A DNA stretch of 63,699 nt, the filler included, from Octopus bimaculoides (lineage: Eukaryota): NCBI RefSeq assembly GCF_001194135.2. It is 5 parts of 4 records of this genome, joined end to end, with 100 filler letters (N's around TTAATTAATTAA, not from the genome) between each part and the next. Parts side by side here need not be neighbours in the genome. Positions count along the whole stretch, not along the records: positions 1 to 25,304 come from NC_068987.1; 4 more parts are not named here. One strand, 5' to 3'. A program made the translations under genes and the position numbers. Below the pieces are notes generated by a model, which did no database searches, was not told the DNA's origin, and saw only the letters and a program-made list of their open reading frames with translations. Below are positions 471 to 24,974 of this stretch, piece after piece. Numbering within the stretch: the stretch's first letter is position 1; each line of letters opens with the position of its first letter.

Positions 471-982
471 CTTGGACCTAAACATAAATAAATCCTATGT
501 CAAAGTAACCATATAAACTAAAAGCTCATGTCACAAAACGGCTGCCAGACTACCTCAATAATTATAGTAAAAAAAATTAAATAGTCAAACAAAAAAATCT
601 AGTTTGCTTTAAATTCACACAAAACTGTTTCATACAAGCATACTGTGTAATTCATATACCCATTAGCTATTTATACAAATGTTAATATTTATCTTAACAG
701 AAAATAGCTAGAAAAATTACTACACCACCTGCCACAAATGCAGGTTTCAAAATTGACATAGATATTATAACATAATATGACTTAAGAGACTTTTTGTACT
801 CATCCAAATGTGACACAGAAATTATTTTATAACTGACAAGCAAAAAGTTCTGGCGAATTCCTGGAGCATAAAATAATTCCATAAATGCCAAATACAAAGC
901 ACAAAGTGCATAAACTAAACAGGCAATCATAGCTTCCAGAATCCCATTGAACCTTCTCTCACAGAAAAAAAAACTGTCACAA

Positions 983-2973
983 TGATTCTTTATTTTGGCA
1001 CTACGGCCATAACACAGAGAGGACAGCACAAGGACAGACAAAACACCACAGTGGGGACAAGAAACACGGAACGAACGAATGAAGGATGGATAATAACAAT
1101 GAGGATGAAATGGCTTGCCTGCTCCCCACTCGCAGGCAGCATCATTTAAATNNNNNNNNNNNNNNNNNNNNNNNNNNNNNNNNNNNNNNNNNNNNNNNNN
1201 NNNNNNNNNNNNNNNNNNNNNNNNNNNNNNNNNNNNNNNNNNNNNNNNNNNNNNNNNNNNNNNNNNNNNNNNNNNNNNNNNNNNNNNNNNNNNNNNNNNN
1301 NNNNNNNNNNNNNNNNNNNNNNNNNNNNNNNNNNNNNNNNNNNNNNNNNNNNNNNNNNNNNNNNNNNNNNNNNNNNNNNNNNNNNNNNNNNNNNNNNNNN
1401 NNNNNATAAATGAGTTTTTTTCCATCTTTTTTTACCTTTTTGCATCTGTTTTTACAGTCATTTAAAGTTTTAAAATTTTACTCACCTATTTTTACCATTT
1501 TATGTACGGCAAGAAGTCGTCACATTCTACTACTGGCGGCAAGACGTCGAACTCGACGCGTACTCCCGTTGGGTCTATCTTCTTTCCGAACAGTTCTCGT
1601 AGTTTTTCACATCTCTCGTCGTCAGTAACAATTGCTTTGGTGCTCTCTGGATAGTATTCCGTCGTTAGTTTCACTCTTATCACTGATTTCATTTTTGTGA
1701 TGTTCTTCTCTATCTCTGTACTTTTCGCATATGCTACCATATGCCATTTATGTTTTGTTTCTTTTTTATTTGTTTTTTTCTGTAGTCCCACTTGTTTTTC
1801 CTTGTTGGCTTCCTTTGATGTTGTTGGTATCTTGTGTTGTGCTTCTTTTTCTCCCCTTTCTTTTCTTTAGTGGACTCTTTGGCGGTGAGTCCACGTCTTC
1901 TTTCCTTTTCTTCTTCCTATTCACCACCGTTTACTCCTCCTCCACCTTCTCTGGACACTTCTCACATACTGGGTTTGTCGCTTTGGCATTTTGCTCCTGC
2001 TCCTCACTCTGCTGCTTCTGTTCCCCTACAACTTCGTCGTGTTTCTGGGGACACCTTGCTTTCATGTGTCCCCTTATTCCACAATGGTAACAGGTTGGAA
2101 GTCTTCCCTCCACCACTACCCTCACATCTTCCGGCAGTTTCACCTCCTCTGCTATCTTATGCAAGTCTTGTAAACTGACTTGGATGGCCGCTGCAAGGCC
2201 GTATCCCCAATAGTTTACTTCTTTCGTCCTTGTCAGTTTCAACACCTTCACGTCCTCCTCCATATTATACAGGATGGCTGCCACCAGCCACGCCTCCTCA
2301 ATCTCCGGGGGTACTCTGCCAATACTTATCCTGGCCACACGTTTGCCACAGTAAGTCGGCAGAAGTACCCACTCTGGCGTCCTTAGCTTCTTGTTCACTA
2401 ATGAACCTTACCTCCACTGTGCCGTATTTCCTCCGTCTCGTGTAAAATGTGAGGCTTTTCACCTCCTTTAGGCATTCCTCTATAGCCTCCACCATGGCTA
2501 TTTCTATTTTTTCAATGTCGTGGACAGCGTTCTATACATCACTGTCGTTTCATCACGCTTGCTGTTAAATTTTCTGACAGTGTCAGCTTTAGACTAGTTC
2601 CATCCTTCTGTATGAGTCTGTTGAACTCCTTCAACTTCTTCTGGTCCATCTTTATCTCTCGTACCTGCAACACGTCAGCTGTCAAACTATTTCCACTGGC
2701 TGAAGCATAGCTGCCGGCTGGAACTGGTTCGCTCTCCATTCTTCCTTTTTTCTCTACTTCATCCATAAATAGGGAAGAAAACAAAATATAATTTCTCAGG
2801 CAAAAAAATAGCAACTTATTAATTCAACAATGAGGTTCAACAATTAGGTTCACCCTTACGGGAGACCTTCAACAATTAACAATGTGACTTACGTCTAACA
2901 GGGATCAATAATGATTAACGCGAAAAATCCCCCCAAAAAACGAACTCTCAACCACTGCTAGTAAGACGAACTG
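983..2973 (-). mobile_element. Unit A: ORF1(gag)-only non-LTR-like element, Tx1/L1-type ORF1
   Basis: Decayed ORF 2766->1492, then 3' hairpin (1108-1147) and AATAAA (989-994). Bounded by the 14-bp direct repeat AAAAACTGTCACAA (969-982, 2974-2987). An N gap (1152-1406) lies in the 3' UTR. Confidence 0.7.
1492..2766 (-). pseudogene. Gag/ORF1-like protein of unit A (frameshifts, one internal stop)
   Basis: Joined ORF-track pieces: MDEVEKK..GSYAS.., FYTRRRKYGTVEVRF, LLPTYCGKRVARISIGRVP, VVVEGRLPT-CYHCGIRGHMKARC (CX2CX4HX4C), a K/E-rich linker, then KWHMVAYAKS..LPPVV. Confidence 0.75.
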
Positions 2974-2987
2974 AAAAACTGTCACAA

Positions 2988-4310
2988 AAAACTGGGTACA
3001 ATTATCTCTGCTTATAAAGGTTTGGTAAGGTCTAGCCAATTTGTTTAAAGTGTCACAGTTTGGCTATTAACACCTAGCTTCTCCCATTTTGACAATGGAC
3101 TTCATCCTGACCTCCTTACATTGCAGTATGAAAAACTGATTACCTGTTTAACTTAACATTATACTTTATAATTTCCTAACAGTCTGCATGTCTGTGTGTT
3201 TATGAGTCTGTGGTTCTGAGTGTTTATGTGCTTGCAAGTCTTTGTTTTTGCTTGGTAATGAATTCTTATCTGTAGCATTTTTCACTGGTGATCCTACTGG
3301 CGAACTTTTCCTGCTTATCGTTGTAGGTTGGTTTACTTCTTCCTTGGCTTTGTATTTTTTCTGTTCCCTTATCGTCAGTGATATCCTCCTCTCTCTTTTT
3401 CTTGATTTTACTACCACAAAATCACTTTCTTGTTCTGTTATCAGATTCTGCTGTTTTTCCACCATTATATTCTCCTGAATTCTCCCCTCTGCGATTTCCA
3501 TTACTGCTCTAGGGCAACTCTTTCTTAAGTGGTCCCCCCGCTTTCGCCACATTCGTGATACTTTGGGAGCCTCCCCATCAACATTATCTCCAGCTTTTCT
3601 TCATTTGGTCGCTATAAAGTTTCAGGTATTCCGTCATAATACTTTTGACTTACTGTACAAATTACCTCTATTCTGTAACCCCCCCCACACTTCACTTGTT
3701 GGCTGTTTATCATGCCCATCTTCCACTCTTCGCCGTTTCTCTCCTTATCTCCGAAAAAAAAAATCAATGCTATTATCCACTCTGGTTCTATGCACAGTGG
3801 GATTCTTCCCACCCTAATTCTAACAATTCGTTTATCCAAACAGTTTGGCGGCAATGTTCATTTCTCTCCCAGTATCATCCTCTTGGAGGATTTTTCCGCC
3901 TCCTCCTCTGATACAACGGTTACCACTATAGACGCATATCTCTTTCCTCTCGTAAAGAACGCTATGCTGTCTCCTATGTGTCTTTCCAAAATTTCTTCTA
4001 TTTCTTTCTGTGGCGTGTTTTCAATTCTGTTTTTATTTGAAGATGTTCTGAATATTACCGTCTTCTTTTCCATTTTCCCTTTTTCCTTCTCTGGCAGGGT
4101 CAGTTTTATACTTGATCCCTCCTTCTTTACCATATTACTATATTTCGCTATCAGCTCTCTGTTGCACTGCAACATCTGTTTCAGCACACTCGGGTCAACG
4201 GGTACTCGACCTCCCGTAGCTTCGGCATAGCTTCCCATTCTTCACAATTATTCACTACCACCAAACAATGGTGGTTTCGCAACACACAAAAACACAACCG
4301 TTCACACCAA
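2988..4310 (-). mobile_element. Unit B: divergent ORF1-only relative
   Basis: Decayed ORF 4238->3166: MGSYAEATG.., FFTRGKRYASIVV, RIVRIRVGRIP, MLMGRLPK-YHECGESG/DHLRKSC (degenerate knuckle). The shared C-terminal domain and 3' hairpin were not found. Confidence 0.6.
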
Positions 4311-6057
4311 AAATGACGATGAAATGGCTGCATTAGGCCCCACTCTCAAGCAGTACCATTTAACAGTTAAATTATACAAATTAACAAATCTTTCTTACAC
4401 TCTTTTTTCTCTTTTAGCATCGTTTTTTAAAAAAAATTTGAAAGTCTATTTTTCCTTCTTTAAAAAAAAAAAAATTTACTTACTTTACTCTTTTTAACAG
4501 TTCATTAAGGATTTCAAATTTTCATACACCACGACCAATGGTAATTCGTCGAATTCAATTTCGACCCCTAAAGGGTCTATACTACTTCCGAACAGTTCTC
4601 TCAGTTTCTCGTATCTCTCCTTGTTAATGATTATTTCCTTGGTATGTTCTGTATATTTCTCCGGTGGTAACCTTATTCTTACGATCGATTTGAACTTCGT
4701 GATCTTTCGCTCGATTGCCATACTTTTGGCGTATGTAACCATATGCCATTTGTTTTCCATTTAACATCCGTTTGCTTCATCGACGGACCTGGGCTATCCG
4801 AGCAAGTCTTTCCACTTGGCTCCTCCCTTGGTGCACCGAAATAAACGTCAATGTTTGAGCTCTCCACGTCATGTTGCAATGATGTTTCTGCTTCCACTCT
4901 ACCTTCTATTGGTGATTCTGCTGGTGTCTCGAACCACTTCCTTTTCTCCTCCATCCTGTCCTGGCTCTCTAATAGAGAGCTTACCCGCTCTTTCCTTTTT
5001 CTCCTATTCATGACAGTGAATGATTCCCCCACTCTATTTTTCTCTCCTTCCGGCACTACCACTTCGGTGCTCTGTTTTTCACTTTTCTACTCTTCCTCTT
5101 CGTTTTCTTTCTGGGGCACCTTGCTTTCAAGTGCTCCTTTTGGCCACATAAGAAATATGTTGGTGGTCTTCCTTCCACTACCACTCTTAGTCTGACATCT
5201 TCTGGGAGAATGATCTCCTCTGTGATCTCGTACTGGTCGTTAAGGCTCACTTGTATAGCCATCTCGATGCCATACCCCCAACAATTAATCTTTTTGGTTC
5301 TCGTAATCTTCAAGATTTTCACTTCATCTTCCATTCTGTGCATGACTACTTCCACCAACCATGCTGCCTTAATCTCGGTGGGTACTCTGCCAATTCTTAC
5401 TCTGGCGACGCGCTTGCCACAGTAAGTCGGCAGAAGTACCCATTCCGGTGTCCTTATCGGCACAAAGGAGTGGTTTATTGCGTCTTCTTCGTTGCTAAAC
5501 CTTTTTCCCACTGTACCGTATTTCCTTCCACGCGTATAAAATGTGGTAAGCTTCTTTACCTTCTCGAGGCACTCCTCTATTGCCTCTATTGGGGCAACCT
5601 CTATTGCCTCTATTGGGGCAACCTCTATCTTTTTTAGAGGACGTGGATAACGTTCTGTACACCACTGTCCTTTTCGCCACATTTTTAGTCAATTCTTCCG
5701 GTTGAGTCGGCCTCAAACTGGCTCCTTCTCTTTCTATTAAATTTACTGCCCTCCTTCCACTATATGGGCTCTATCTTAATTTCTTTTACTTCCAGGGCAT
5801 TGGTAGATACTCCTCATGCGTAACTTCCAGTTGGTTCATTTTCCATCTCTCCTCTCTTCTCCACCTCACCCATAATTGGGGAAGAAAACAAATATGAAAA
5901 CAGTGAAAAACAGCAACAATAGTTCAAAATTCAACAAATTAAACAGATCCTAAGTTCACCCACACGGGGAGACCTTCGACAAGCATACAACAACAGACGA
6001 CTTCAGAATCACAAGTGATCTAACCCAAAATACCACCAACGCGAAAAAACAGGTCGG
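4311..6057 (-). mobile_element. Unit C: ORF1-only element, closest to unit A
   Basis: Decayed ORF 5873->4494 with LLPTYCGKRVARVRIGRVP, VVVEGRPPT-YFLCGQKEHLKARC and MENKWHMVTYAKS..LPLVV. In-frame 24-bp duplication (IEVAPIEA x2). 5' leader shares TTTTTCGCGTT and GAAGGTCTCCC..GGGTGAAC with unit A. 3' hairpin at 4322-4361. Confidence 0.7.
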
Positions 6058-7815
6058 TGTTTCTTTATTTGCTTATTCAAGCGTACATAAAGTGGACGAA
6101 CAAGGACAGACAAGACAGCACAAGTGGGGACAAATAACATAAAATAATGAATGATATGATAATTACACAATGAAGCTACTACTCGACCCCACTTCCAAGA
6201 AGTACCATTTAAATCTATTTTGTTAACTTGTTAACTAAATTATTTCGGCTCAGTATACAGTGGATTTAATTTTTCAAAGTCTACCACAGGTGGCAGAGGT
6301 CCAAAGTAGTTTATTTCTGTTCTCAATGGGTTTATCGCCTCTCCGAAGCTTGCTTTCAATTTTTTGTAACACTTTCTATCAATAAACATACATTTCCTAC
6401 CTGGAACTTGAACTGTCTCTTCTCTAACTCTGACAACTTTGTTAATTTTGTTAATTTTTTCTTCAATCGCAGGATTTGTCCAATATGTTATAAATCCTGT
6501 TGATATTTTGTATTGTTTTTCTTGCGGGTCTATCTGTGTAATCAGTTGATGTATTTATACCGTTTGAGTTCGAGTTTTTTCATGTATGTGAAGTGCCTGT
6601 GATTTCCTGTGGGTGTTCTGTTATTGGGGTTACTGTTCTGTATGTACCTGTATGTATGCGTTTGTTTGGGGATTGAGGCCTGTTTAGTGTCATTGTATTT
6701 GTTAGTTGCTGTGTAGGCATTTGTGTATCACTGTGTTCTTTCCTTCTCTTTTTCTTAGAGTTCTTTGGGGGTGAGTAGTTCTTTGTTACCTTTTTCTTTC
6801 TATTTTGTATTTCATACACTTCATTTAGACTTGATTCTTCCATGTCTTCCTCCGGCTTCTCACTGCTACTGATTTCTTCCTTTCTCACTTCTGATGGTGC
6901 TTGTTTTTGGAGGAGGGGACAGCTCACCTTAATGTGCCCATTCTCCCCGCAGTGGGAGGGTCTCCCCCTCCACTACTACCCGCAGTCTTACATCCGCCGG
7001 GAGTTCAACCTCCTCTGTTATCTTTTGAAGGTCCCTGATGGTGGCCTGGATTATGACCTCGAGGCCCTAACCCCATCAATTTAATTGTTCTGTGCGGCTC
7101 ACTTGTAGAACCTGCGGGTCATCCTCCATGTTCATCATAATGGCTGCCAGCAACCACATTTCTTTAATTTCCGGGGGGAAGCCCTGCCAATTCTTATTCT
7201 TGTTACTCTCTTCCCAAGATAAGTTGGTAGCAGTGCCTACTTCGACTTCAAGGCTTCCGTGGAGGTCATTACTGCTTCTTCCATTGACGAGAAGTGCACT
7301 TCCACCGTTCCAAATTTCCTGCCTCCACAAAAAAAAAATCGATTTTATCGCTCAACTTATTCAAGCATTCTTCAACATCTCCTGCCGTTTCTATCTTCTT
7401 AGTTAGCAGTGACAGAGTTCTGTACACCACTGTCATTAGTTCCTTGTTTGTTGTCACATCCACTGGTGGCGTCAGTTTTAACTTTGCGCCCTCTCTCCTA
7501 AATAAATCCAGGCTGTTCTCCACTGCCTCCAAATTCACAGTCACTTCTGTTACTTCCAGCTTTCTTACAAACTCCGCAACACTTTCACATTTCGCTACTG
7601 CTGCGTAGCTGCCAGCACGCGCTTGCTTTATCTCCGTTGTAGCTTTTTCCTCACTAGGAGAGAAAAACCACAAAACAAAAGGAAACAATCCTTAAATTCA
7701 AAACCATCAGCAGGCACCCCGCTAGGGGGGAACCCCTAACACAGATTAACCATCCGCAACACAAAAATTTTACAAAACACCAGCCGAACGCACTTCAACA
7801 AAAACAACCCGGTGA
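6058..7815 (-). mobile_element. Unit D: ORF1-only element, 5' end abuts an N gap
   Basis: Decayed ORF ~7688->6240: AGSYAAVAK, TVVYRTLS, VRLRVVVEG/RPSHCGENGHIKVSC. Hand-translated C-terminus YWTNPAIEEKINKINKVVRVR..KLKASFGEAINP..LPPVVDFEK. 3' hairpin 6169-6209 and AATAAA 6064-6069. Confidence 0.7.
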
Positions 7816-8950: not shown

Positions 8951-10224
8951 GAACTTTTTGCGTGTTTGTACGTTTGAAAGACTGGCTTTACATGTTTTTC
9001 GCATGTTTTCACTTTTCAGGACCCCCTTTTCACATTGTTCCTATTTTTGATTAAATATTTTGTTCACACATCTTTGACTGTCAAATATTTTTTGCTCAAC
9101 GTTCATACATGCATACACACATACATGTTTTCAGCCTCGTGCTATCCACTCTGACATATCAATACTGAGCGTTGAATTTTGCATTTGGTCCTGAAATGTT
9201 TATTTTGCTTTCCTTTTCTTCTGCTTCAGCAGATTTTGGACAATTATTTTTTCACTTGTTTTCAACTGTTTGTACACCTTTTTGTACCTTGGTACATTCA
9301 GCTACCTGTTATTTTTCTTCTGTTTTCTCTTTTACTACCGGCCTCTTTATGCGTATCGCACATTTGTCTACGACAAATGTTCTCGCAGGGGCGTAACTGT
9401 AACAGAAGTGATTTACACTGTCATTATGTGAGATGTTTTCGTTGCGAGTTGTTTAGGCTTAAATACCTGGATATCGGCTTCACATGCCTTTTCGTTCCAG
9501 CAGGTCACGTGACCTGGTGGTTAGCCGAACTTCTTGTTCGCATTGGTCAGTTTCCAGCCACCCAATCGCGTTGGCGCAACAGTTCGTTTTTCCTTAATCG
9601 GGAAATTAATCGCCAGCCCTGGGAGCCTCCTGATCTCTATAAGAACTGCAGTTCTCGAGTGCGCTATGCCTTTGGCACACGCCACTGACTACATGCAACT
9701 CTTCTCTGACAATGATGTATCTGACACCAGCCAGTCTCCACTTTCATCTCCACCAGACGCCTGCCTACATCGTTGCTGTATGACCACCACGCAACCAACA
9801 GACTAACGGCTGCCTCTACACACCACCAAACAGTGCGTCAACTTTGTCTACAACATCGATAGTCCAGCCTGGCCACGAAGTCTCTCACAACCTTGTTGTA
9901 ACCTGTTATATTAATTTATTTCATGTATGGCAATCATTGTATTTTATATCAGAAAATAAATCGTCGCTAACCAATTCATTTTCATCTCACGTATATCATT
10001 TTCACATTGCTCTTATTTACCATCTTTGTTATAACTCCTTCAAGAGTCATGTTAGGGTACCACCTCTGCGAGTTGCAGAATTACTTATTCACTTTTCACT
10101 GGGGTTAACATTCAGGTTGACCATCGGTGTCCAGAAAATAGGTACCAGTAATTTACTGTTTGAATAAATTTACGCTTTATTAAAATTTCTCGGTGTTGTG
10201 TCGTTATTTCGAACAGAAGTGGTC

Positions 10225-10400: not shown

Positions 10401-10524
10401 GCAACAATAACCCTTACTATCTATCATATTAAAGTAAATTCTATCATATTACGGTAAATTCCTGTGGGGTAAACAATCTGTCACGCTATGAAAATGGGAT
10501 GGTTAAGGTATGAAGTGCGAGAGA

Positions 10525-10555
<31 letters not shown>

Positions 10556-10671
10556 GGGGAGTGGGAGGGAGAGAGATTTAAATGAACGGTATCAACACGT
10601 GCATACATACACCCATATACGAATGCTATTGGCGCGCAGGCATACACCCTGACGGCAATTAGTTGTGTGTA

Positions 10672-10705
<34 letters not shown>

Positions 10706-10750
10706 GGGGGAGAGAAAGAGGGAGAGAGAGAGAGAGAAAGAGGGAGAGAG
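10525..10750. repeat. (GA)n and (GT)n microsatellites
   Basis: Direct inspection. Confidence 0.9.
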
Positions 10751-11142
10751 AAAAGAACTAAAAGAGGACTTTTTAGAAAAATATCGTTTATCTTCAGCTA
10801 GCAAATGCGTGAAATATTCCATTTCAGTAGTTTTAGTCATTTGCTAAATTTATTCGATTGAAAGATCGCTTTTGGGTGGGTAGGATCCCTGTTCATCATT
10901 GGTAAATTTTGCACGGTAGAAATTGAACTCTGTTCTGCAAGCTAAGGAACCATCAACCAGCTATTTACAATGGTCACCATCCTAATATGTCCTATCTAAC
11001 CTTTTTAAAAGCGTGATGCATGACAAGTAATTATTTTATCGATCTCGGAATATTGAAGATTCGAATTCGATTCTAACCAGATTTAGACTTTAAACGTTAA
11101 GAGTTGTAACTAAGTAGCGGGGAGTGGGATATAGTAGGTCAG

Positions 11143-12203
11143 TAGGGTATAGTGGGCATTTGCCAGATTTTCATAATTTTCTCCCTACTCCAAACCAGGG
11201 ACTATGATGAAGCAGCCATTATGAATTGCATTATCCCTCCTACTCCTATAAATGTTATATTCTTCCTGGGGATTCCATTTCAAGTTCCTCATTCTGGACC
11301 AGAGCACTCAGTCACTAGACCAGCCAATATTTGATCGTCAAACAAAACTTCGCGGTGCTGTAAAAATTACTGCAGATTTGGATTTTTGTGCTGGAGGTAT
11401 GTTCAGAGTATCTTCTTTGCCTATGTTATGTTGGATAAAGGAAATATTCTTGAAAATTCAGAAATTCAAGGAAATTCAAAAACGGGGCATAATAAGTCAC
11501 TTGGCAGTTGGCGAAATGGAACATAACGGGTCACTTAAGATATAGCACACAGACGTCTATAAATATAAGAAAAGAATTAAAGAAGTCTTCCACACCCTAC
11601 AAATAGGTGCCAGTATCTGAAGGTATATTAGCAGCATCGTTTCATGTAACTACTAGTATTTACACAGAATCAAGAACTAGGTAGTAGAGCGTGTGGTAGC
11701 CAAAGTAAAAACAAAATCTAGGAGTGGAAAGACAGGAGAATAACTTGCTCCAAAATGGCAGAAAACAGAGTCTGACAATAGTGATGGTGACCATGACAGT
11801 GCAGATGATTCGGAGGAAAAGGAGACTGAGAGTTCCCTCTGCAAGAGATTCTGGAGCAGATACAAAGGCAAGAACAACGAAGTTTGGTCACTGTGTGACC
11901 TTTTTGATGGTTATGTTCTCCTTAGATTTATTCCAAAGGGAACAGATGTTACTCATGTTTTTCACATGTTTCTTTGTTGATTGCATTCAATGTTCACCCA
12001 AATTTGTGGAAGTAGTTTAACTATAATGATGTCTATATGAAGCAAGCATTCAAAATTGCTTCCTAATCCATCGGAGGTACTTATTAGAATCATGACGCAA
12101 TTTTTGAGATTGTAAATCCATGTTTAACTGTTACATTTTGGTTTTTATTTGACATTGTTTCCAAAATTTTTGGAAAATTGACCCATTACACCTCACCGTA
12201 CCC
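11143..12203 (+). mobile_element. Degenerate pogo/Tigger-like DNA transposon remnant
   Basis: Imperfect terminal inverted motifs GGGTATAGTG / CACCGTACCC. Acidic tract followed by a decayed PHD-like Cys pattern (SLCKRFWSRYKGKNNEVWSLCDL) near 11740-11990. Confidence 0.35.
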
Positions 12204-12826
12204 AATAAAACATGTACTCTGATGCTCTGCCGTTTCTGACTTTAAGATAGTCTTTCAGAATTTCCAGAACATTGTAAAATGAATCATCACAAGATCTCGA
12301 GCATGGTTGCTCAGTCTGCTAGAAATATCAGCTAATTCCCCTTCACATCACACATTACTGCTTCAAAATGGAATTACATTGAATATCATAGTTTTAGACA
12401 CACCGTGTCTGAAAAAGGAAACAAGAGACGATAACATTTGGTGTGTCCATCCGTCTACTGGACCATGGATGACCTGGCGGTAAATAACAACCACAACAAC
12501 AATAAAACAAAATGGAAATCGATTTGTCAAAAACTAAACTTTATTTATCACAAGACAAACTAGAAAAGAATGAAATGGTAGGAGGAGAGGTGATTGGGGA
12601 ATCAGACAAGTACGACATAAAGGTCTTTGTTATTCAACATTAAAAATAAAAATAAACGAGTATATTTATCTTTTTTGTGTAAGTCACAGTTTGTCGCTGA
12701 GGTTTGTCGCTAAGACAAGGGTCACGGTTGAAAATAAAGGGTTATTTCAAATCGATCGTAGTGATTTGTTTTGATTCCACGTTTGTACACATTCGATGAT
12801 TTATATATATATATAAAGGGACTCAC

Positions 12827-13096
12827 CAAACAACAGTTAGGGATATATAAATGCTTGAAAAACGATGGGTTGGTGATGGATGAGGACTGAGGTTGAAATA
12901 ACAACAATAACGTATCCCATTCTCTGATATCAGACTGGGGCTGAGAAAGAAAAGGAGTGAGAGGAAGAGGGGGAATTGGGTTCTTTGATGGACATATAGT
13001 TAAGATGAAGGTCTGCTTGTCTCTGTCTTGTTCATAAGATGCAACCATAACACTTTAAGTACTCTTAAAACGATGCTTTTCTTTCCCTGCTGCAGT

Positions 13097-13134
<38 letters not shown>

Positions 13135-13618
13135 TAAATGAGGGTAATACTAGAGGTTGTAAAAATAGAGTAGAAGTAGAAGGGTAATAGTAGCTGTGGG
13201 TTTGATAGCTGTGTTGGTAATAGTGGTTGTAGTAACAGCAATGGTGGTAGTAGTTGGAAATGTAGTACTTGGAGTGTAAGTATTTAAAGTAGTAGTAGTA
13301 GTGGTGGTGGTGGTGGTGGTGGTGGTGGTGATAGCGGTGTGGTGGTGGTGGTAGGTTGTATTGGTTAGAAATATCAATGATTACGAAACCAGCTCTTGAA
13401 AATATTTGCACGATAAATTTGTTTAACCAACAATTCCAAGTTGTTAAAATAATTTTACGGTCTCTTTAACCTCATCTTTGAAGGTGAAACACTTTTTGTA
13501 ATACAGTTTCACAATGTTTCGATCGATTTCGCCTCGGATCGTTATTCCTGGATGTGTACACAGTAACAAACAAGGATCGGAACTAGAAACTTAAATTTCT
13601 TAACTAAAGTGTGTACAC
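12827..13618 (-). other. Candidate host exon (mostly low-complexity UTR-like)
   Basis: Acceptor TTTTTCCTGCAG (ends 13619), donor GTGAGT (12826-12821), CpG-rich 5' part. An ATG at 13048 is open to the donor. No recognisable protein. Confidence 0.25.
13098..13352. repeat. (TAG)n and (GGT)n trinucleotide tracts
   Basis: Direct inspection. They explain the poly-His/Thr/Leu ORFs in the track. Confidence 0.9.
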
Positions 13619-14204
13619 CTGCAGGAAAAAGATACTTAATAACGACCGATGATCAAACCGATAGAAAAGTAACCTACGTGTAAAAAATTGAAAAATCTAC
13701 CTTCACTAAAAACATGAATTTAATACTCCAAAAAATTATAATTGTATTAGCAACTTGTCTGCAACGAATAAACATTAAATTTAATGTGTTTTAAAAAAAT
13801 ATTTAGTTATAAAGAACAAACACAAATATATTGCGTAAAATATATTTTCACAATATTTTACTGATCTTTTTTGCTGCTTGTGAAAATAATTCATCTTAAA
13901 TTTTTTGTCAACGAGAATAAATAGTGAATAAAATAAATAAAATGGGAAGCGAAAAACAAAATAAAATAATAGCCATTATAACAACAAACATGAAATGAGA
14001 GGGAAAGGAAGGAGACAGAGAAACAGGCGAGAGGAGGAAGAGCGAGAGGAAGGGAGAAGAAAGAGAGAGTTAATGAGTGAGAGGAAAAGAGAGAAAGACG
14101 GAGAGGCATTAATATAGTCTGGATGTTGAGACAATAATGTGACATCATTGTTAATGTCAGTTGAATAGTCTCTCTCTTTCCCTCCTCCCCTCTCTCTCCG
14201 TATA

Positions 14205-14449
14205 TATATTCTTTCATTCTTTTACTTGTTTCAGTCATTTTGACTGCAGCCACGCTGCAGCACTTCCTTTAGTCGAACAAATCGACCCCAGGACTTATTC
14301 TTTGTAAGGCTAGTATTTATTCTATCGGTGTCTGTTACTGAATTGCTAAGTTACGGGGACGTAAACACACAAGCATCGGTTGTCAAGCGATGGTGTTGGT
14401 GGTTGGGGGGACAAACACAGACACACAAATATATATATATATATATATA
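14205..14449 (-). mobile_element. CORE-like SINE, 3' half
   Basis: Reverse complement matches the 3' half of 57050-57510 (gtttgtcccccc..gtaacttagc..gaataagtcctggggtcgattt..aatgactgaaac). Confidence 0.7.
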
Positions 14450-14689
14450 NNNNNNNNNNNNNNNNNNNNNNNNNNNNNNNNNNNNNNNNNNNNNNNNNNN
14501 NNNNNNNNNNNNNNNNNNNNNNNNNNNNNNNNNNNNNNNNNNNNNNNNNNNNNNNNNNNNNNNNNNNNNNNNNNNNNNNNNNNNNNNNNNNNNNNNNNNN
14601 NNNNNNNNNNNNNNNNNNNNNNNNNNNNNNNNNNNNNNNNNNNNNNNNNNNNNNNNNNNNNNTATGTAGTTCTACAAATATATATAGTT

Positions 14690-16520
14690 TTATATGTAGT
14701 TACATATATAGGGAGAATTCACGAAAGAAAAACAAAAAAACAAAAGACGAAGGCAGGTGGTGTAGACAACAAACAGATGTATTAGTTTAACGCTCGGGAA
14801 GTGAAAAGTCTTTAACGTTTCGAGCCTACGCTCTTCCGCAGAAAGGAACACAGAAAGAAACAAGGAGAGAAAATAAAGAATGTGTAGTAGCTAGCGATCT
14901 ATCAGGTCGAATGCCGGACAGAGGGGTCACACAGGAGAGCTAGGAAGAAGGGGAAATAATAAAGTAGTGGTGATTCCAAAACGAAGGTGCGTGTGCATGT
15001 GCATAAGAGAGTATGTATGTGCGTGTGGAAGAGGGCTGGTGACCTTGACGTGTGCGTGTGTGTATGTGTAGGTGTGTGGATGTGGGGTTGGGAATGGCCA
15101 GTGCTAGTGTGTGCGTGGTGCTGTGATGTGATGTGGTGTAGTGTTGTGTGGTATGGTGGTGTATGGTGTAGTGGTGTGTGGTGTGATGGTGTTGGGAGGT
15201 GGGGAGGCGAGAGTGGGAAAANNNNNNNNNNNNNNNNNNNNNNNNNNNNNNNNNNNNNNNNNNNNNNNNNNNNNNNNNNNNNNNNNNNNNNNNNNNNNNN
15301 NNNNNNNNNNNNNNNNNNNNNNNNNNNNNNNNNNNNNNNNNNNNNNNNNNNNNNNNNNNNNGGGGTATAGGTGGGGTATGTGGGTAGGAGTGAAAAGAAG
15401 AAGTAGGAGTCGGAGCAAGAGAGGAGAGGTGGGTAGGAGGAAGTAGGTGTGAGAGGGAGAGAAGAGAGGGGAGGAGAGAGCAGGAAATGCAGTAGATGAC
15501 ATTGGTAGAAGTTCAGGTGAAGGAGTCGGTGATGTGATAGGGTCGATGATGGGTGCCGGTGAGGAGGGTGGTGTCGGAGAGGTAGGGTGGTGGGGTGGTA
15601 GGTGAGGGGAGACGGGAGACGGCGGGGCGTGTGCGGAGGGAGAGAACAGATGCACGATCCATGGAACGTGCTCTGGTAAGGGCGGTGTGGATAGTGGTGA
15701 GGGAATATCCACGTAGGATGAAGTGGTGAGCCATGAGTTGAGACTGAGTCTCAAAGTCATGGTCGTCACTACAGAACCTGCGTAGACGGAGGAATTGGGA
15801 ATAGGGGATGGAAAGTTTGGTGTGTTTAGGGTGGGAGGAGAAGTTGAGGTATGAGTGTGAGTCTGTGTGTTTGTAGTGGATGGAGGTGGTGAAAGTGGAG
15901 TGATGAATGCTGACCGAAATGTCAAGAAAGGAGACAGAGATAGTGCAGGAGAAGTGGAGGGCAGGATGGAAAGATTTGACGGAAGAGAGGAAGGAGTCTA
16001 GATGTTCGCTGAAGTGTCTAGATGTTCGCGGGAGAGGTCGCACCGATACAGTCGTCAATACAACGGCCAGAGTGTGACCAGTAAAACTTGAAAATATTNN
16101 NNNNNNNNNNNNNNNNNNNNNNNNNNNNNNNNNNNNNNNNNNNNNNNNNNNNNNNNNNNNNNNNNNNNNNNNNNNNNNNNNNNNNNNNNNNNNNNNNNAC
16201 AATTACGAATACAAACAAGAAGATAATAACAACAGGTGTCTTTCGACAGAGAACGAATCCAATTGAATTGGCGTGTAGGATGTGAAAGCCTAAAAGCAGG
16301 AACATGGGAGATGGACATAAGAGGTGTTGGCGGTCGGCAGTCAAGCCAAGAAAGAGAGATCATGGCTGGCCGGACACCAGTCACGTGCAAGGAAGAGAGA
16401 TGGGTAGGGGGCAGCGGGATTGAAGGATTAGAAAAGATCAGAGACAAAGAGAAAGGTACAGGGGAGATAACTGAGTGGGAAACAGTGGGAGTTAAAGAAA
16501 AAGAGGGCCAAGAAATGTGA
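14690..16520 (-). mobile_element. Penelope-like element remnant (RT C-terminus, GIY-YIG start, hammerhead-bearing 3' repeat)
   Basis: RCIDD (RT active-site-like), FLDISVS..HTDSHSYLNFSSHP..IPYSQFLRLRRFCS (typical PLE RT thumb), TSSNVIYCISC (GIY-YIG start). Hammerhead-like motif at 14810-14845. Confidence 0.8.
14810..14845 (-). ncRNA. Minimal hammerhead motif with core mutation (A6->C)
   Basis: Minus strand CTTT-CTGCGGA-A-GAGC-gtag-GCTC-GAAA-CG-TT-AAAG: stems I and II intact, palindromic AACGTT stem III. Confidence 0.55.
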
Positions 16521-16788
16521 GAGAGAGAAGGGGAGCGAGAAAAAGAAAAAAAGCAAGAATGTATGAAGGGAACTAAAAGATAGAATGAGAGTCGTACAAA
16601 ATGTAGACACATACCTACCATAAGGTGAACACAAGTGTTTACGTACGCCGCTATATGTATATATAAATATATAAATGGAACAAAAATGCAATAGAGGACA
16701 ATAAAACATTCGGACAGATAGACGATACAAAGGCGGACAAGAGAAACATCAATAAGAAGGACAGGCAAAAAAAGACGGATCAAATGGA

Positions 16789-16848
<60 letters not shown>

Positions 16849-17272
16849 TCTATTTATACATATGCATGTATATATATGTTGTTATATATGTATGTATNNN
16901 NNNNNNNNNNNNNNNNNNNNNNNNNNNNNNNNNNNNNNNNNNNNNNNNNNNNNNNNNNNNNNNNNNNNNNNNNNNNNNNNNNNNNNNNNNNNNNNNNNNN
17001 NNNNNNNNNNNNNNNNNNNNNNNNNNNNNNNNNNNNNNNNNNNNNNNNNNNNNNNNNNNNNNNNNNNNNNNNNNNNNNNNNNNNNNNNNNNNNNNNNNNN
17101 NNNNNNNNNNNNNNNNNNNNNNNNNNNNNNNNNNNNNNNNNNNNNNNNNNNNNNNNNNNNNNNNNNNNNNNNNNNNNNNNNNNNNNNNNNNNNNNNNNNN
17201 NNNNNNNNNNNNNNNNNNNNNNNNNNNNNNNNNNNNNNNNNNNNNNNNNNNNNNNNNNNNNNNNNNNNNNNN

Positions 17273-17306
<34 letters not shown>

Positions 17307-17521
17307 CAAATGATATATGAGCATATGCATGTATACATACATATATGTACATACCTACATTTACATGTATATATAGATGCATATCCGGGTACAGGACGTC
17401 AGAAAAATGAACGGGAACATAAAGCACGAAAACGGACTTTGTTTACAGACAACAGAACGAACACAGGAAAACAGACAAGCCACTTATGGAATTATTCCTT
17501 CATTAGCTGCCTCTATTCTAA

Positions 17522-17579
17522 ACTAGACGTTTCGAAGATGAGGCAGAACGCGCTCTTAGAATAGCTCTTCCTGAGTAGT
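17522..17579 (-). ncRNA. Degenerate hammerhead-like motif in a PLE-like repeat
   Basis: Minus strand ACTA-CTCAGGA..TCTTC-GAAAC-GTC-TAGT: G5->C in the core, 4-bp stem I, GUC site. Confidence 0.35.
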
Positions 17580-18431
17580 GGATTAACCCACTAAACAGAG
17601 GATTCCAAGGTAGCAAACACAAACCAAGACTTTTTTATTATTATTTATACACCCTGTTACCCTTAAAGAAAGATCAACCCACCAGTTAATATTTCTAGTT
17701 TAGTCATTTATACAACGTCCTGTAGTGTTACACTGCAAAATAGTATGATTTAAATATATTAAACCTTCATTCTTCTTCTTGAGCTCTTCCACTCTTCTTT
17801 TCTTTTATGTATTTTCCTTCACCCTGATGAAGCTCCATGTTCTAGATCGGATGTGTTACAAAATATGACGAATATTATTCTCAGAATTTTCAATGGCAAC
17901 ACTGTAGGACATTGGAAGAAGAAACGGCTGTTAGATGGGATAAAGTTTTGTATTTAAAAAATAATATTCGATGTTAGTCAATTGTTGTTGATCTAGATTT
18001 CTCCATTTCCTGATTAATTTAAATTTGATTCCTGATAAACTCATGTTTATCTTTATCATTGCCTGTATCCTATAAGCTTAATATGCTTGCATATGTATGA
18101 CCAGGGTTAACATAGATAATTATACCGGTAGTAAAACGGATATTTTTATTCCTTAGACGGTTATTCCAACCTCTACCTCTACTAACCTATATAATATATA
18201 TGTGCTTGTATGTGTGTGTCTATATGTCCTTGTCTATGTGTTTGTCCTTTACCACTGCTAGACAATCGTTGTCGATGTGTTTACATTCCTGTAACTTAGC
18301 AGTCCGGGAAAGAGACCAATAGAATAAGTACTAGGTTTGAAAAAGTTCTGAGGTCGATTCGTTCAATTAAGATTCTTCAAGGCGTTGCGACAGCATTGCA
18401 GCAGTCTAATGACTGAAACAATTAAATGATA

Positions 18432-18469
<38 letters not shown>

Positions 18470-21167: not shown

Positions 21168-21355
21168 ACACACACACACACACACACACACATACACACA
21201 CACACACAAACACACACACATATACGACGGGCTTCTTTCAGTTTCCTTCTCCCAAATCCACTTTGATCGGTCCGAGGCTATAGTAGAAGACACCTGCCCA
21301 AGGTGCCACGCAGTGGGACTGAACCCGGAATGATGTAGTTGGGAAGCAAGCTTCT
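21168..21355 (-). mobile_element. CORE-like SINE, 5' half with (TG)n
   Basis: Reverse complement of gggttcagtcccactgcgtggcaccttgggcaggtgtcttctactatagcctcgg. Confidence 0.7.
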
Positions 21356-21585
21356 GAGAGAAGGTTTTAAAAAATGGAGAGAAAAAAATAACGCATCTGG
21401 ATTATAAATGTACTTGTTGAAACGACCGGAAAGAAATGATTGGGGAGACATGAGTGCCAAGGGAGACAACTGTAATCTGGCTAACGTGTTTTTGAGCAAT
21501 CGTGTATATGTGGCCACGCATGTTCGTGAGTTTGAAGACTATGTGAACGTGTGCATGTGTATGTATGGGTGTGTGCGTGTATATG

Positions 21586-21617
<32 letters not shown>

Positions 21618-22214
21618 AGTAAACAAGTACGTATGCGTGTGTGGAGCGATGTTTGCGCGTGCTCCGTGCATTTATGTATCTGTGTGTGTGGACATATGTA
21701 TATGTGTGGCAGTGTGTGAGGCTGTCTAACGTATATGCGTGTATGAGGCTAGCAGATGTGTGTATATGTGTGTGTATGCAAATAGATGTGTGTAGCAGCT
21801 AATGTGTGCGTTTATACTTTGTGCTAGTAACATGTGTGCATGCGTGTATAATCTCGTGTTGTTTTTAGGGTGTGTGTGTGCGTGTGTGTGACACTCTCGT
21901 GTGCGTGTGTATTATGTGTGTTTATGCGTGAATATTGTGTGTGTTTATGCGTGTGTATGTGTGTGAGCGGGTGTACGTGTTCTTGTTATAAGTTGGTGTG
22001 TGTATATCGAGATGTTGCATAAAGTGTATGTATGGATTTGAAACGTGTATAATATACTGTATTTGTGTTTATGTATATGTGTATAAGGGTGTGTTGTGGA
22101 CGTATGGGTGTGTTGTGGAGAGATGTATGTGGGTCGACCTGGATGGAGGTGCGAAGTGAAATAGGGGTGATAGAAAGAGGGGTTGGGAGGTGTGTAGTGT
22201 GTGTAAATGTGCGT

Positions 22215-22527
22215 GGAGGTGAGTTTAAGTGAAGAGAGGTAACGAATTGAGACCAGAAAGGATCGAGGAATGAAGAGAGAAAATAAATTCCTGCTCTCAA
22301 CGGAGGCAGGTGTTCGGGTGGCTTTTGTGCAAAGCCAGTCCGAACACAGACAGACGTTGTTGTTGTGGATGACCATCGAGCTGAAGTGGCGCGAGACCGG
22401 TTATTGCTAGTTCTGATGTTCCGGAGATGCTCGGCAAATCGGTCAGCTTAACGCAGGCCAATTTGACTAATGTACAGAGAATGGCAGAGAGCAGAGGATG
22501 CAGTAGATGACATTGCTGAAGATGCAG

Positions 22528-22530
<3 letters not shown>
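22215..22530 (-). mobile_element. Penelope-like GIY-YIG endonuclease fragment
   Basis: Hand translation across frameshifts: SNVIYCILCS..LYISQ.GLR*ADRFAEHLRNIR..EQEFIFSLHSSILSGLN. Confidence 0.65.
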
Positions 22531-22563
<33 letters not shown>

Positions 22564-22749
22564 NNNNNNNNNNNNNNNNNNNNNNNNNNNNNNNNNNNNN
22601 NNNNNNNNNNNNNNNNNNNNNNNNNNNNNNNNNNNNNNNNNNNNNNNNNNNNNNNNNNNNNNNNNNNNNNNNNNNNNNNNNNNNNNNNNNNNNNNNNNNN
22701 NNNNNNNNNNNNNNNNNNNNNNNNNNNNNNNNNNNNNNNNNAAAAAAGT

Positions 22750-24238: not shown

Positions 24239-24275
<37 letters not shown>

Positions 24276-24390
24276 CACACACACACATATACATAGGGAT
24301 TTGCGTCTTTACCCGCACATCTATATATATATATATACATATAGGCATAGAAAGGTACACACATAGGTACATACATACATACATACATAC

Positions 24391-24888: not shown

Positions 24889-24913
24889 CATACATACATA
24901 CATACATACATGC

Positions 24914-24914
<1 letters not shown>

Positions 24915-24973: not shown

Positions 24974-24974
<1 letters not shown>

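What the first reader, a model, noticed from the sequence alone, without database searches (positions are those of the whole stretch)
1050..6209. Covarying 3'-UTR hairpin with an invariant loop and a potential pseudoknot
Seen on the minus (sense) strand: three hairpins at 1108-1147, 4322-4361 and 6169-6209. They share an outer AAUG/CAUU stem, but the inner stems differ while still pairing (UGCCUGC/GCAGGCA; CUGC/GCAG; UACU-CUUG/CGAG-AGUA). All keep AGUGGGG in the loop. After units A and D, a complementary CCCCACU sits about 60-70 nt downstream (plus 1050-1057 and 6122-6129), giving 8 bp of loop pairing, followed by a conserved UUGUCUGUCCUUGU tract and AAUAAAGAA. In C the downstream half is lost at the junction with B. 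Known: LINE RTs recognise structured 3' UTRs, such as L2 stem-loops and the R2 3' UTR fold. Inference: this is the cis signal for trans-mobilisation, or another functional RNA structure.
Basis: partly seen in the sequence, partly recalled or inferred. Interest (0 to 1): 0.75.

Follow-up and report, generated by a model that had tools for sequence, protein, structure and literature searches.

The report
Folded 3′ end of octopus LINEs
The three hairpins belong to the folded 3′ untranslated region of an octopus jumping-gene (LINE) family and its offshoots that have lost the copying enzyme; compensating mutations preserve a long-range G-run/C-run pairing and a tiny terminal hairpin, so the RNA signal is real but of a known general kind.

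Summary
The window (minus strand 986-7811) holds four head-to-tail, decayed copies of an ORF1-only retrotransposon. Its protein is the ORF1 of a two-ORF (APE-RT) LINE found intact in Octopus sinensis and Argonauta. An ORF1-only copy with an intact ORF and a perfect 16-bp target-site duplication shows that these RT-less units are mobilised as such.

Support differs between the three RNA features.
1. A 3-4 bp terminal hairpin just before the A-rich end (AAAUAAAGAA) covaries strongly. It is shared by LINEs, ORF1-only units and a ~230-nt SINE, so it is the likely RT recognition site.
2. The loop G-run/downstream C-run pairing is kept through compensatory changes in several subfamilies (AGUGGGG/CCCCACU, AUGGGG/CCCCAU, GCGGGA/UCCCGC, UGGGAA/UUCCCG).
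3. The local hairpin stems are only weakly supported once free choice of register is controlled for.

Whether the G:C pairing forms a pseudoknot or a competing nested long-range helix is open. SINEs carry the tail but not the hairpin or C-box, so the hairpin/pseudoknot is probably an accessory fold of the LINE 3′ UTR, not the minimal trans-mobilisation signal. Verdict: a new variant of a known kind, of moderate interest.

The parts
1108..1147 (-). Hairpin H1 of unit U4 (copy A): AAAUG..UGCCUGC [GAGUGGGGA] GCAGGCA..CAUUU
   Evidence: (MFE -15.7 kcal/mol, z -2.1)
1050..1057 (-). C-box (box 1) of copy A, UCCCCACU; complementary to loop AGUGGGGA (8 bp)
   Evidence: (best duplex site downstream, -15.0 kcal/mol, 1.9% of shuffles as good)
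1021..1041 (-). Pyrimidine tract UUGUCUGUCCUUGU plus box 2 (GUCCUCUCUGUG) of copy A. This is the start of the tail shared with LINE and SINE copies.
996..1009 (-). Terminal hairpin of copy A: UGGC-CGUAGU-GCCA
984..996 (-). A-rich 3' terminus of copy A (AAAAUAAAGAAUC). It marks the element end and contains an AAUAAA hexamer.
   Evidence: element ends defined by TSDs in L005, L006, L007
4322..4361 (-). Hairpin H1 of unit U2 (copy C): AAAUGG..CUGC [18-nt loop with AGUGGGG] GCAG CCAUUU. The unit is truncated ~20 nt further 3', so it has no C-box or tail.
   Evidence: (z -0.2)
6169..6210 (-). Hairpin H1 of unit U1 (copy D): AAAUG.UACU.CUUG [GAAGUGGGGU] CGAG.AGUA..CAUU
   Evidence: (z -0.9)
6122..6129 (-). 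C-box (box 1) of copy D, CCCCACUU; complementary to loop AAGUGGGG (8 bp)
   Evidence: (-14.5 kcal/mol, 0.6% of shuffles as good)
6094..6113 (-). Pyrimidine tract plus box 2 (GUCCACUUUAUG) of copy D
   Evidence: (80% identity over 56 nt to the LINE tail L002 18014-18069)
6071..6082 (-). Terminal hairpin of copy D: GCUU-GAAU-AAGC. Its stem is fully different from copy A but still paired.
6059..6070 (-). A-rich 3' terminus of copy D (AAAUAAAGAAAC), joined directly to the 5' end of the next unit
986..7811 (-). Head-to-tail array of four decayed ORF1-only LINE derivatives: U1 about 6059-7811 (5' end in gap), U2 about 4300-6058, U3 about 3000-4299 (aberrant 3' part), U4 984 to about 2990. Each has a 5' UTR, then an ORF1 with an N-terminal region, an RRM-like domain, a CCHC knuckle, a K/E-rich linker and a ~90-aa C-terminal domain, then the 3' UTR.

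Best explanation
The hairpins are the proximal part of a structured 3' UTR. It belongs to an octopod two-ORF LINE family (ORF1 with a CCHC knuckle; ORF2 with APE, RT and zf-RVT) and to its ORF2-less, ORF1-only derivatives. Four decayed head-to-tail copies of the derivative make up window 986-7811.

The UTR has two functional layers.

(1) A distal tail of ~55 nt: pyrimidine tract, box 2, a 3-4 bp terminal hairpin, then the A-rich end AAAUAAAGAAAU, with no poly(A). LINE, ORF1-only and SINE copies all share it. It is most likely what ORF2p recognises and where reverse transcription starts, as in 'stringent-type' LINEs.

(2) A proximal G-run just after the stop-codon region. It base-pairs with a C-run box 40-70 nt downstream. 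In full-length LINE copies the homologous G1:C1 helix encloses a second hairpin. That hairpin's UGGGGUC loop matches the CCCCACA loop of a further hairpin placed just before the tail.

These G:C contacts fold away the AU-rich spacer and dock the stop-codon end of the UTR next to the tail. I infer that this is an accessory cis fold: it presents the tail, or helps assemble the RNP on elements that encode ORF1p. It is not the minimal signal for trans-mobilisation.

Shown: element identity, tail sharing, TSDs, and covariation of the terminal hairpin and of the G:C helix. Inferred: RT binding at the tail, and the docking or accessory role.
For: Element identity:
- The best protein relatives are Octopus CCHC proteins; 504 relatives were found.
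- The same ORF1 architecture sits directly upstream of an APE-RT ORF2 in Argonauta L005, O. sinensis L004 and L007. Pfam finds Exo_endo_phos, RVT_1 and zf-RVT.
- The L005 LINE has a 16-bp TSD and ends ...GGCGAAUAAAGAAAUG with no poly(A).
- An ORF1-only element, L007 2495-4185, has an intact 463-aa ORF and a perfect 16-bp TSD.

Tail:
- nhmmer finds it in 19 places, including LINE, ORF1-only and SINE copies.
- One SINE copy has a 13-bp TSD, and three octopus SINE copies plus an Argonauta one lack the G-hairpin and C-box.
- Terminal hairpin: 94% of cells are paired, all 4 pairs show compensatory changes, and the covariation score is 0.888 against 0.226 in shuffles (0/500). Slid controls score 0.15 or less.
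- In a register-free control, 14 of 16 copies have a stem of at least 4 bp, against 4.06 expected.

G:C helix:
- Variants are AGUGGGGA/UCCCCACU, AAGUGGGG/CCCCACUU, AUGGGG/CCCCAU, GCGGGA/UCCCGC and UGGGAA/UUCCCG.
- Matched loop/box partners pair better than mismatched ones (P about 0.001).
- Covariation score is 0.316 against 0.157 (0/500), with 3 pairs compensatory. An alternative mapping gives the same result.
- The loop's best duplex site anywhere downstream is the C-box, with p of 0.03 or less in 6 of 10 copies.
- The LINE second hairpin covaries (UCUGA/UCAGA against UCAUGA/UCAUGA) while keeping its CCCCA loop.

Strand: G-U pairs in the stems fit the sense strand only.

Literature analogues: ORF2p of stringent LINEs binds the 3' tail stem-loop (PMC4176376). 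[quoted passage not shown]
Against: - Only about 10 independent 3' UTRs could be collected, and no genome-wide harvest was possible.
- The covariation counts rest on small hand-built ungapped mini-alignments, in which I chose the sites.
- Pairing is weak or ambiguous in four copies: L002b (duplex p 0.48), L007 unit 1 (5 bp, p 0.25), the O. sinensis L004 LINE and the Argonauta LINE.
- Two LINE copies (L002 17838-18070 and L003 68290-68575) show no recognisable G-hairpin/C-box pair.
- The local hairpin itself is not statistically secure.
- In copies A and D, a nested long-range helix that destroys the hairpin dominates the predicted ensemble.
- The proposed docking function is pure inference.
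Confidence: 0.6

Rival explanations
1. One reading: the hairpin with its loop-to-downstream pseudoknot is itself the cis signal by which a LINE RT recognises and trans-mobilises these RT-less units.
For: The structure sits in the 3' UTR of non-autonomous units that carry TSDs. It also occurs in full-length LINE 3' UTRs. Its pairing covaries. R2 protein does use a pseudoknotted 3' UTR element.
Against: SINE copies with TSDs are mobilised with only the distal tail and lack the hairpin and C-box. Some LINE copies lack a recognisable version. The far stronger covariation signal is in the terminal hairpin.
Confidence: 0.2
2. There is no pseudoknot. The G-run:C-run pairing is a plain nested long-range helix, homologous to the LINE G1:C1 stem, which closes the proximal 3' UTR. 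The 'hairpin' is then an alternative or incidental fold, possibly a two-state switch.
For: In copies A and D, the pseudoknot-free ensemble gives the GGGG:CCCC helix a pair probability of about 1.0, extended to about 20 bp at the cost of the hairpin. In LINE copies the homologous AGUGGG/CCCACU helix is nested and the G-run is not in a hairpin loop. Hairpin stems fail the register-free control and RNAalifold.
Against: In L002b and L007 unit 1 the local hairpin is long (14 and 13 bp; z -1.7 and -5.4) and would have to melt for a nested helix of only 5-6 bp to form. A loop of 6-10 nt with the G-run at its 3' side recurs in 8 of 10 copies.
Confidence: 0.3
3. The G-rich hairpin loop is a binding site for the element's own CCHC-knuckle ORF1 protein (a packaging signal), as retroviral nucleocapsid knuckles bind G-rich loops. 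The C-box only masks or regulates it.
For: The hairpin is present in elements that encode ORF1p (LINE and ORF1-only) and absent from SINEs, which encode none. ORF1 has a CCHC knuckle and a weakly RRM-like domain. Binding of G-rich loops by retroviral NC knuckles is established knowledge, not tested here.
Against: There are no binding data. Protein binding alone does not explain the covariation of the loop flanks with the C-box. The structure model has low confidence (pLDDT 57).
Confidence: 0.2
4. Chance or relic: the G-run and C-run are merely inherited sequence blocks, and the hairpins are fortuitous folds of decaying repeats.
For: Single-copy energies are mostly unremarkable. The downstream region is C/U-rich, so CCCC is easy to find. 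Duplex p-values are not significant in 4 of 10 copies.
Against: Compensatory double changes occur at three pair positions across subfamilies. Matched partners beat mismatched ones. The motif order is conserved between Octopus subfamilies that are only about 70% identical.
Confidence: 0.1
5. A self-cleaving ribozyme or other known RNA family, or an LTR/polyadenylation module of an LTR element.
For: The tandem units with AAUAAA plus a downstream U-run at first looked like LTR R/U5 regions.
Against: There is no Rfam match at E<=1 in the region or in related loci. Full-length relatives are TSD-flanked LINEs without LTRs. Copies end 3-6 nt after AAAGAA, not at a poly(A) tail.
Confidence: 0.03

Closest known systems
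Stringent-type LINE/SINE 3' tails (eel UnaL2, zebrafish ZfL2-1/-2; L2 clade)
   Same: An APE-RT LINE without poly(A). A short conserved stem-loop lies just before the 3' end. The same tail is carried by a partner SINE with TSDs. Stem pairing is conserved while the sequence varies.
   Different: The RT clade was not determined here. The terminal motif is A-rich (AAAUAAAGAAAU) rather than short tandem repeats. The stem is only 3-4 bp. There is an additional upstream G-run/C-run long-range contact. ORF1 is of the CCHC type.
R2 3' UTR RNA (pseudoknotted element bound by R2 protein; PMC12222951)
   Same: [quoted passage not shown]
   Different: R2 is a site-specific, single-ORF element with a restriction-like endonuclease. 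Here the endonuclease is APE-type, insertion is dispersed or in arrays, and the G:C contact lies upstream of the tail rather than within the minimal element.
ORF1/gag-only non-autonomous LINE derivatives (mammalian HAL1; Drosophila HeT-A with TART/TAHRE)
   Same: RT-less elements that keep an ORF1/Gag with a CCHC knuckle and share 3' sequences with an autonomous LINE. As with HeT-A/TART, they lie in mixed head-to-tail arrays.
   Different: The loci seen are not telomeric (L002 lies at 51 Mb of a 95-Mb chromosome). There is no oligo(A) at the junctions. This comparison is from my own knowledge and was not tested.
Retroviral packaging-signal hairpins with G-rich loops bound by NC zinc knuckles
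   Same: A G-rich hairpin loop in an RNA whose own protein carries a CCHC knuckle.
   Different: The location is the 3' UTR rather than the 5' leader. The loop has a covarying RNA partner. No binding evidence exists.

Membership tests
Stringent-type LINE 3' tail (LINE/SINE common tail) | Autonomous partner encodes an APE endonuclease and a reverse transcriptase | tested here: met
   ORF2 downstream of the homologous ORF1 in L004, L005 and L007. Pfam hits: Exo_endo_phos, RVT_1, zf-RVT.
Stringent-type LINE 3' tail (LINE/SINE common tail) | Conserved stem-loop immediately upstream of the 3' end, with pairing kept by compensatory changes | tested here: met
   Alignment A7: 94% paired, 4 of 4 pairs compensatory, score 0.888 against 0.226 (0/500). 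14 of 16 copies have a stem of at least 4 bp, against 4.06 expected.
Stringent-type LINE 3' tail (LINE/SINE common tail) | The same tail is present on a short non-autonomous (SINE) partner flanked by TSDs | tested here: met
   A ~230-nt element at L006 10446-10674 has a 13-bp TSD, and further copies occur in L006, L007 and Argonauta L005. tRNA origin was not confirmed: ARAGORN and Rfam were negative.
Stringent-type LINE 3' tail (LINE/SINE common tail) | No poly(A); the element ends at a defined sequence | tested here: met
   TSDs abut ...AAUAAAGAAAUG (L005)...GUAAAGAAAUA (L006 SINE) and ...AAUAAAGAAAUA (L007 unit 1).
Stringent-type LINE 3' tail (LINE/SINE common tail) | Cognate ORF2p binds the tail stem-loop and needs it for retrotransposition | not testable with these tools
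   Needs a binding assay and a retrotransposition assay.
L2/CR1 clade membership | RT phylogeny places ORF2 in that clade | not tested
H-type RNA pseudoknot | Hairpin-loop nucleotides pair with a downstream single strand, supported by covariation | tested here: met
   5-8 bp in the ORF1-only copies. Compensatory changes occur at 3 pair positions.
H-type RNA pseudoknot | The hairpin stem and the loop-downstream helix form at the same time | tested here: inconclusive
   The nested ensemble prefers a long-range helix over the hairpin in copies A and D. The hairpin is strong in L002b and L007 unit 1. A 0-1 nt loop 1 across an 8-bp stem 2 is sterically tight, so a full 8 bp is unlikely in a pseudoknot.
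Kissing-loop complex (full-length LINE copies) | Two stable hairpins with complementary loops | tested here: met
   L007 LINE units: GCUCG-UGGGGUC-CGAGC and UCUGA-CCCCACA-UCAGA, or UCAUGA-CCCCAAA-UCAUGA. Duplex p = 0.01-0.03. Only two or three related copies were available.
ORF1-only non-autonomous LINE derivative (HAL1-like) | ORF1 is homologous to that of an autonomous LINE, ORF2 is absent, the LINE 3' end is kept, and there is evidence of own insertion | tested here: met
   ORF1 homology. Units of 1.7-2 kb without ORF2. Tail 80% identical to a LINE tail. 16-bp TSD around L007 2495-4185.
Known self-cleaving ribozymes / any Rfam family | Match to a curated covariance model | tested here: not met
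   No hit at E<=1 in 986-7811. No gathering-score hit in L006 or L007.
LTR retrotransposon (LTR/PBS/PPT) | Direct long terminal repeats flanking an internal region; a primer-binding site | tested here: not met
   TSD-flanked full-length and ORF1-only copies have no terminal repeats. The repeats seen in the window are whole units in tandem.

The most novel reading that the evidence does not exclude
The G-run/C-run contact also works between molecules. The G-loop of an RT-less ORF1-only RNA (GUGGGG) would kiss the CCCCAC loop of the hairpin that precedes the tail of a full-length LINE RNA, or the reverse. RT-less RNAs would then be co-packaged into the LINE RNP and copied by end-to-end template jumping. 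That would explain both their trans-mobilisation and the mixed head-to-tail LINE/ORF1-only arrays that have no TSDs between units.
Probability: 0.1. Interest if true: 0.75.

Novelty: new variant of a known kind. Interest (0 to 1): 0.45.

Why it matters
How the RT of a LINE without poly(A) chooses its RNA is known in detail for only a few elements (R2, UnaL2/ZfL2). Here one family offers three natural 'deletion mutants' side by side: the full LINE, an ORF1-only derivative and a SINE. Together they separate a minimal tail (terminal hairpin plus A-rich end) from an accessory long-range fold, which gives a directly testable map of cis requirements in a lophotrochozoan LINE. Two further points matter. 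The family has coding-competent RT-less ORF1 elements with TSDs. It also forms head-to-tail arrays, which bears on how gag-only elements such as HeT-A or HAL1 persist. None of this overturns current ideas.

Tried and rejected
- LTR-element reading (AAUAAA plus U-run as R/U5): dropped once TSD-flanked LINE and ORF1-only copies without LTRs were found.
- Penelope/hammerhead or other ribozyme: no Rfam match.
- Search with the C-terminal ORF1 domain alone: no hits.
- Metagenome scan for the C-box plus tract motif: 0 hits.
- Five contig look-ups (window ORF, P0003, P0006, P0009, P0014) were not on record.
- nhmmer with hairpin-to-C-box profiles found no copies beyond those already known in the ~205 kb held.
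- MAFFT plus RNAalifold on six hairpins gave no consensus structure.
- The register-fitted count for the hairpin's closing stem looked excellent, but the shuffled-flank control discounts it.
- tRNA origin of the SINE could not be confirmed.
- The AlphaFold model of the ORF1 core has low confidence and gives only weak RRM-like/TAP-RBD matches.
- A TSD for the L006 solitary unit and for the window array was sought and not found.

Full report
**Observation.** I read the minus strand of 900-6500. The three hairpin regions are at 1108-1147 (A), 4322-4361 (C) and 6169-6210 (D), each with AGUGGGG in the apical region. The heptamer or its complement occurs 7 times in the window against 1.66 expected, and no shuffle reaches 7. 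Downstream of A and D lie UCCCCACU (1050-1057) and CCCCACUU (6122-6129), giving 8 bp with the loops. After these come UUGUCUGUCCUUGU and AAUAAAGAA. Copy C is cut off about 20 nt after the hairpin by the 5' UTR of the next unit. The assembly gap 1152-1405 sits in a non-coding A-rich stretch. Its flanks are colinear with two ungapped copies and only about 15 nt of unit sequence are missing.

**What the units are.** Window 986-7811 (minus strand) is a head-to-tail array of four decayed units of about 1.8-2 kb. They are 72-79% identical to one another.
- Each unit has a 5' UTR, then an ORF with a CCHC knuckle (Pfam zf-CCHC), a K/E-rich linker and a ~90-aa C-terminal domain with no Pfam match, then the 3' UTR.
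- The closest proteins are Octopus bimaculoides 'CCHC-type domain' proteins. An exhaustive profile search finds 504 relatives, including intact 386-623-aa proteins in O. bimaculoides, O. sinensis, O. vulgaris and Argonauta hians.
- In Argonauta (L005), O. sinensis (L004) and an O. sinensis array (L007), this ORF is followed within 8-50 nt by an ORF2. Pfam finds Exo_endo_phos, RVT_1 and zf-RVT in it. The protein is therefore the ORF1 of a LINE.
- The Argonauta LINE is flanked by a perfect 16-bp TSD and ends ...GGCGAAUAAAGAAAUG without poly(A).
- The window units lack ORF2. That such ORF1-only elements move as units is shown by L007 2495-4185, which has an intact 463-aa ORF1, a full 3' UTR and a perfect 16-bp TSD.
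- Mixed head-to-tail arrays of LINE and ORF1-only units, with no TSD between units, occur in the window, in O. bimaculoides L002 and in O. sinensis L007.

**The distal tail.** The last ~56 nt of unit D are 80% identical to the 3' end of a LINE ORF2 copy in L002. A profile of this tail finds 19 instances in the sequence held. These include a ~230-nt SINE present three times in O. sinensis, one copy with a 13-bp TSD, and once in Argonauta.

Just before the A-rich end, every class carries a tiny hairpin whose stem sequence differs between lineages but stays paired:
- UGGC/GCCA (copy A)
- GCUU/AAGC (copy D)
- CCUA/UAGG
- CGCC/GGCG
- UGCC/GGCA
- GCCC/GGGU
- ACCC/GGGU
- AGCC/GGCU

I built a mini-alignment of the stems with the loops replaced by a fixed linker.
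- 94% of cells pair and all four pairs show compensatory changes.
- The covariation score is 0.888 against 0.226 ± 0.072 in shuffles (0/500), and slid controls score 0.15 or less.
- I had chosen the registers, so I ran a register-free control: 14 of 16 copies have a hairpin of at least 4 bp ending within 1 nt of the A-rich motif, against 4.06 expected.

It matches the logic of stringent-type LINEs, whose ORF2p binds the tail stem-loop (PMC4176376). It also matches R2, where a structured element is followed by an A-rich single strand leading to the active site (PMC12222951).

**The G-run/C-run contact.** Related copies carry different but matching pairs:
- A: AGUGGGGA/UCCCCACU
- D: AAGUGGGG/CCCCACUU
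- L002b: AUGGGG/CCCCAU
- L006: GCGGGA/UCCCGC
- L007 unit 1: GGGGG/CCCCC
- LINE unit 2: UGGGAA/UUCCCG
- LINE units 3-4: AGUGGG/CCCACU

The tests gave the following.
- Pairing each loop with its own box gives more flanking base pairs than pairing it with boxes of other copies: a sum of 21 against 10.7 ± 3.0, P about 0.001.
- On an ungapped mini-alignment anchored by homology, 80.6% of cells pair and three pair positions show compensatory changes (G-C/A-U; U-A/C-G/G-C; G-C/A-U). The covariation score is 0.316 against 0.157 ± 0.038 (0/500), with slid controls at 0.15 or less. An alternative mapping that uses the LINE loop-loop pair gives the same picture.
- An unbiased duplex search of each loop against everything downstream picks the C-box. 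It beats dinucleotide shuffles at p of 0.03 or less in 6 of 10 copies, but not in L002b, L007 unit 1, L004 or L005.

In full-length LINE copies of L007 there are two G-runs and two C-runs. The first pair forms a nested stem around a hairpin with a UGGGGUC loop. That loop matches the CCCCACA (or CCCCAAA) loop of a second hairpin just before the tail, and the second hairpin's stem covaries. The ORF1-only 3' module starts at a sequence homologous to the LINE ORF2 stop region (UUAAAUGGUACU against CAUAAAUGUAAUAC). Its G-run corresponds to the first LINE G-run (my reading).

**The hairpin itself.** This is the weakest layer.
- MFE z-scores range from -5.4 to +0.4; the three window copies score -2.1, -0.2 and -0.9.
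- A register-fitted count looks impressive. However, a 4-bp stem enclosing the G-run arises in 42-84% of shuffled flanks: 8 of 10 observed against 5.95 expected.
- In copies A and D, the pseudoknot-free ensemble puts the long-range GGGG:CCCC helix at probability of about 1 and extends it at the expense of the hairpin.
- In L002b and L007 unit 1 the local hairpin is long and stable, so there the G:C pairing would have to be a pseudoknot.

Pseudoknot against nested helix or switch therefore remains open.

**Interpretation.** SINEs move with the tail alone. The tail, meaning the terminal hairpin plus the A-rich end, is therefore the likely RT recognition and priming module. The G:C contact is an accessory fold found in the elements that encode ORF1p. 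I infer that it compacts the AU-rich spacer and brings the stop-codon end of the UTR next to the tail. It may help present the tail, assemble the RNP or favour cis action. An ORF1p (CCHC) binding role for the G-rich loop is a live alternative, as is an intermolecular kissing role. The ORF1 core model has low confidence (pLDDT 57), with an 80-residue domain that weakly resembles RRM-like RNA-binding domains. No known RNA family matches.

**Limits.**
- Only about 10 independent 3' UTRs could be reached through the look-up route available.
- The mini-alignments are hand-built.
- There are no expression, probing or binding data.
- The LINE clade is not assigned.
- I found nothing in the searched literature describing this family's 3' UTR. 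The octopus LINE studied in PMC9115989 is a single-ORF RTE and is a different element.

**Verdict.** The feature is real and sense-strand specific. It is a new variant of the known class of structured LINE 3' UTRs, of moderate interest.

Noticed in passing
window 996-1009 and 6071-6082 (minus strand); L002 18040-18052; L003 68530-68545; L005 15222-15234: A 3-4 bp terminal hairpin directly before AAAUAAAGAA, with fully different but complementary stems in different copies. LINE, ORF1-only and SINE copies all share it. It is the strongest covariation signal in the region.
   Followed up: yes
window 1475-1489 and 4473-4486 (minus strand); L007 ~10985 and ~16257; L005 ~11585; L004 ~11803: A conserved 5' splice-donor-like motif (AG|GUAAGU or GUGAGU) sits right at the ORF1 stop codon in LINEs and ORF1-only units. 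In LINEs the ORF2 AUG follows within 8-50 nt. It could be a splice site, a U1-binding site or a termination-reinitiation signal.
   Followed up: partly
window 2848-2867, 5954-5974, 7713-7733 (minus strand); L007 ~14825-14845, ~20040-20060: A conserved 5' UTR hairpin with a CCC(C)/GGG(G) stem and a 4-5 nt loop (for example GGUCUCCC-GUAA-GGGUGAAC) occurs in every unit.
   Followed up: no
window 986-7811; L002 9300-18100; L007 4341-20850: LINE and ORF1-only units lie head to tail with the 3' A-rich end joined directly to the next 5' end, with no TSD or poly(A) between them. This suggests template jumping or insertion at element ends. It resembles HeT-A/TART arrays but is not at chromosome ends.
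   Followed up: partly
L007 2479-4201: An ORF1-only element with an intact 463-aa ORF1 is flanked by a perfect 16-bp TSD (GGATGTGATATAATGA). This looks like a recently mobilised RT-less element.
   Followed up: yes
L006 10433-10687; L006 465-692; L007 420-650; L005 ~8960-9135: A ~230-nt SINE family carries a B-box-like GGUUCAAAUUCC and the LINE tail, and is conserved between Octopus and Argonauta. One copy is inserted inside an ORF1-only unit with a 13-bp TSD. ARAGORN and Rfam do not call a tRNA.
   Followed up: partly
window 1152-1405; L002 10914-10964; L001 11030 onward: Assembly gaps repeatedly fall in the A-rich stretch between the ORF1 stop and the hairpin. This suggests a low-complexity segment or collapsed repeat that is hard to assemble.
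   Followed up: partly
window 3000-4299 (minus strand); L003 9955-10934: Unit U3 lacks the C-terminal ORF1 domain, the hairpin and the tail. A 79%-identical copy in O. vulgaris is interrupted at the same region by a 5'-truncated LINE RT fragment and was annotated as part of a 50-kb chimeric gene with an integrase domain (P0007).
   Followed up: partly
window 1492-1791, 4494-4760, 6240-6500 (minus strand): The ~90-aa C-terminal ORF1 domain (consensus ...KLRELFG..IDP.GV.VEFD.LPPVV...) is conserved from Octopus to Argonauta and has no Pfam match.
   Followed up: partly
window 10500-25304: The rest of the window is rich in microsatellites and N gaps ((GA)n, (TG)n, (TA)n, (TACA)n, (GATA)n). These produce spurious sub-threshold miRNA-family hits in Rfam (mir-297, mir-466).
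   Followed up: no
L002 5268-5740: An ORF with a GIY-YIG-like motif (...CVYSIPCSCGRLYKGET...) lies next to the array and is likely a Penelope-like element fragment.
   Followed up: no
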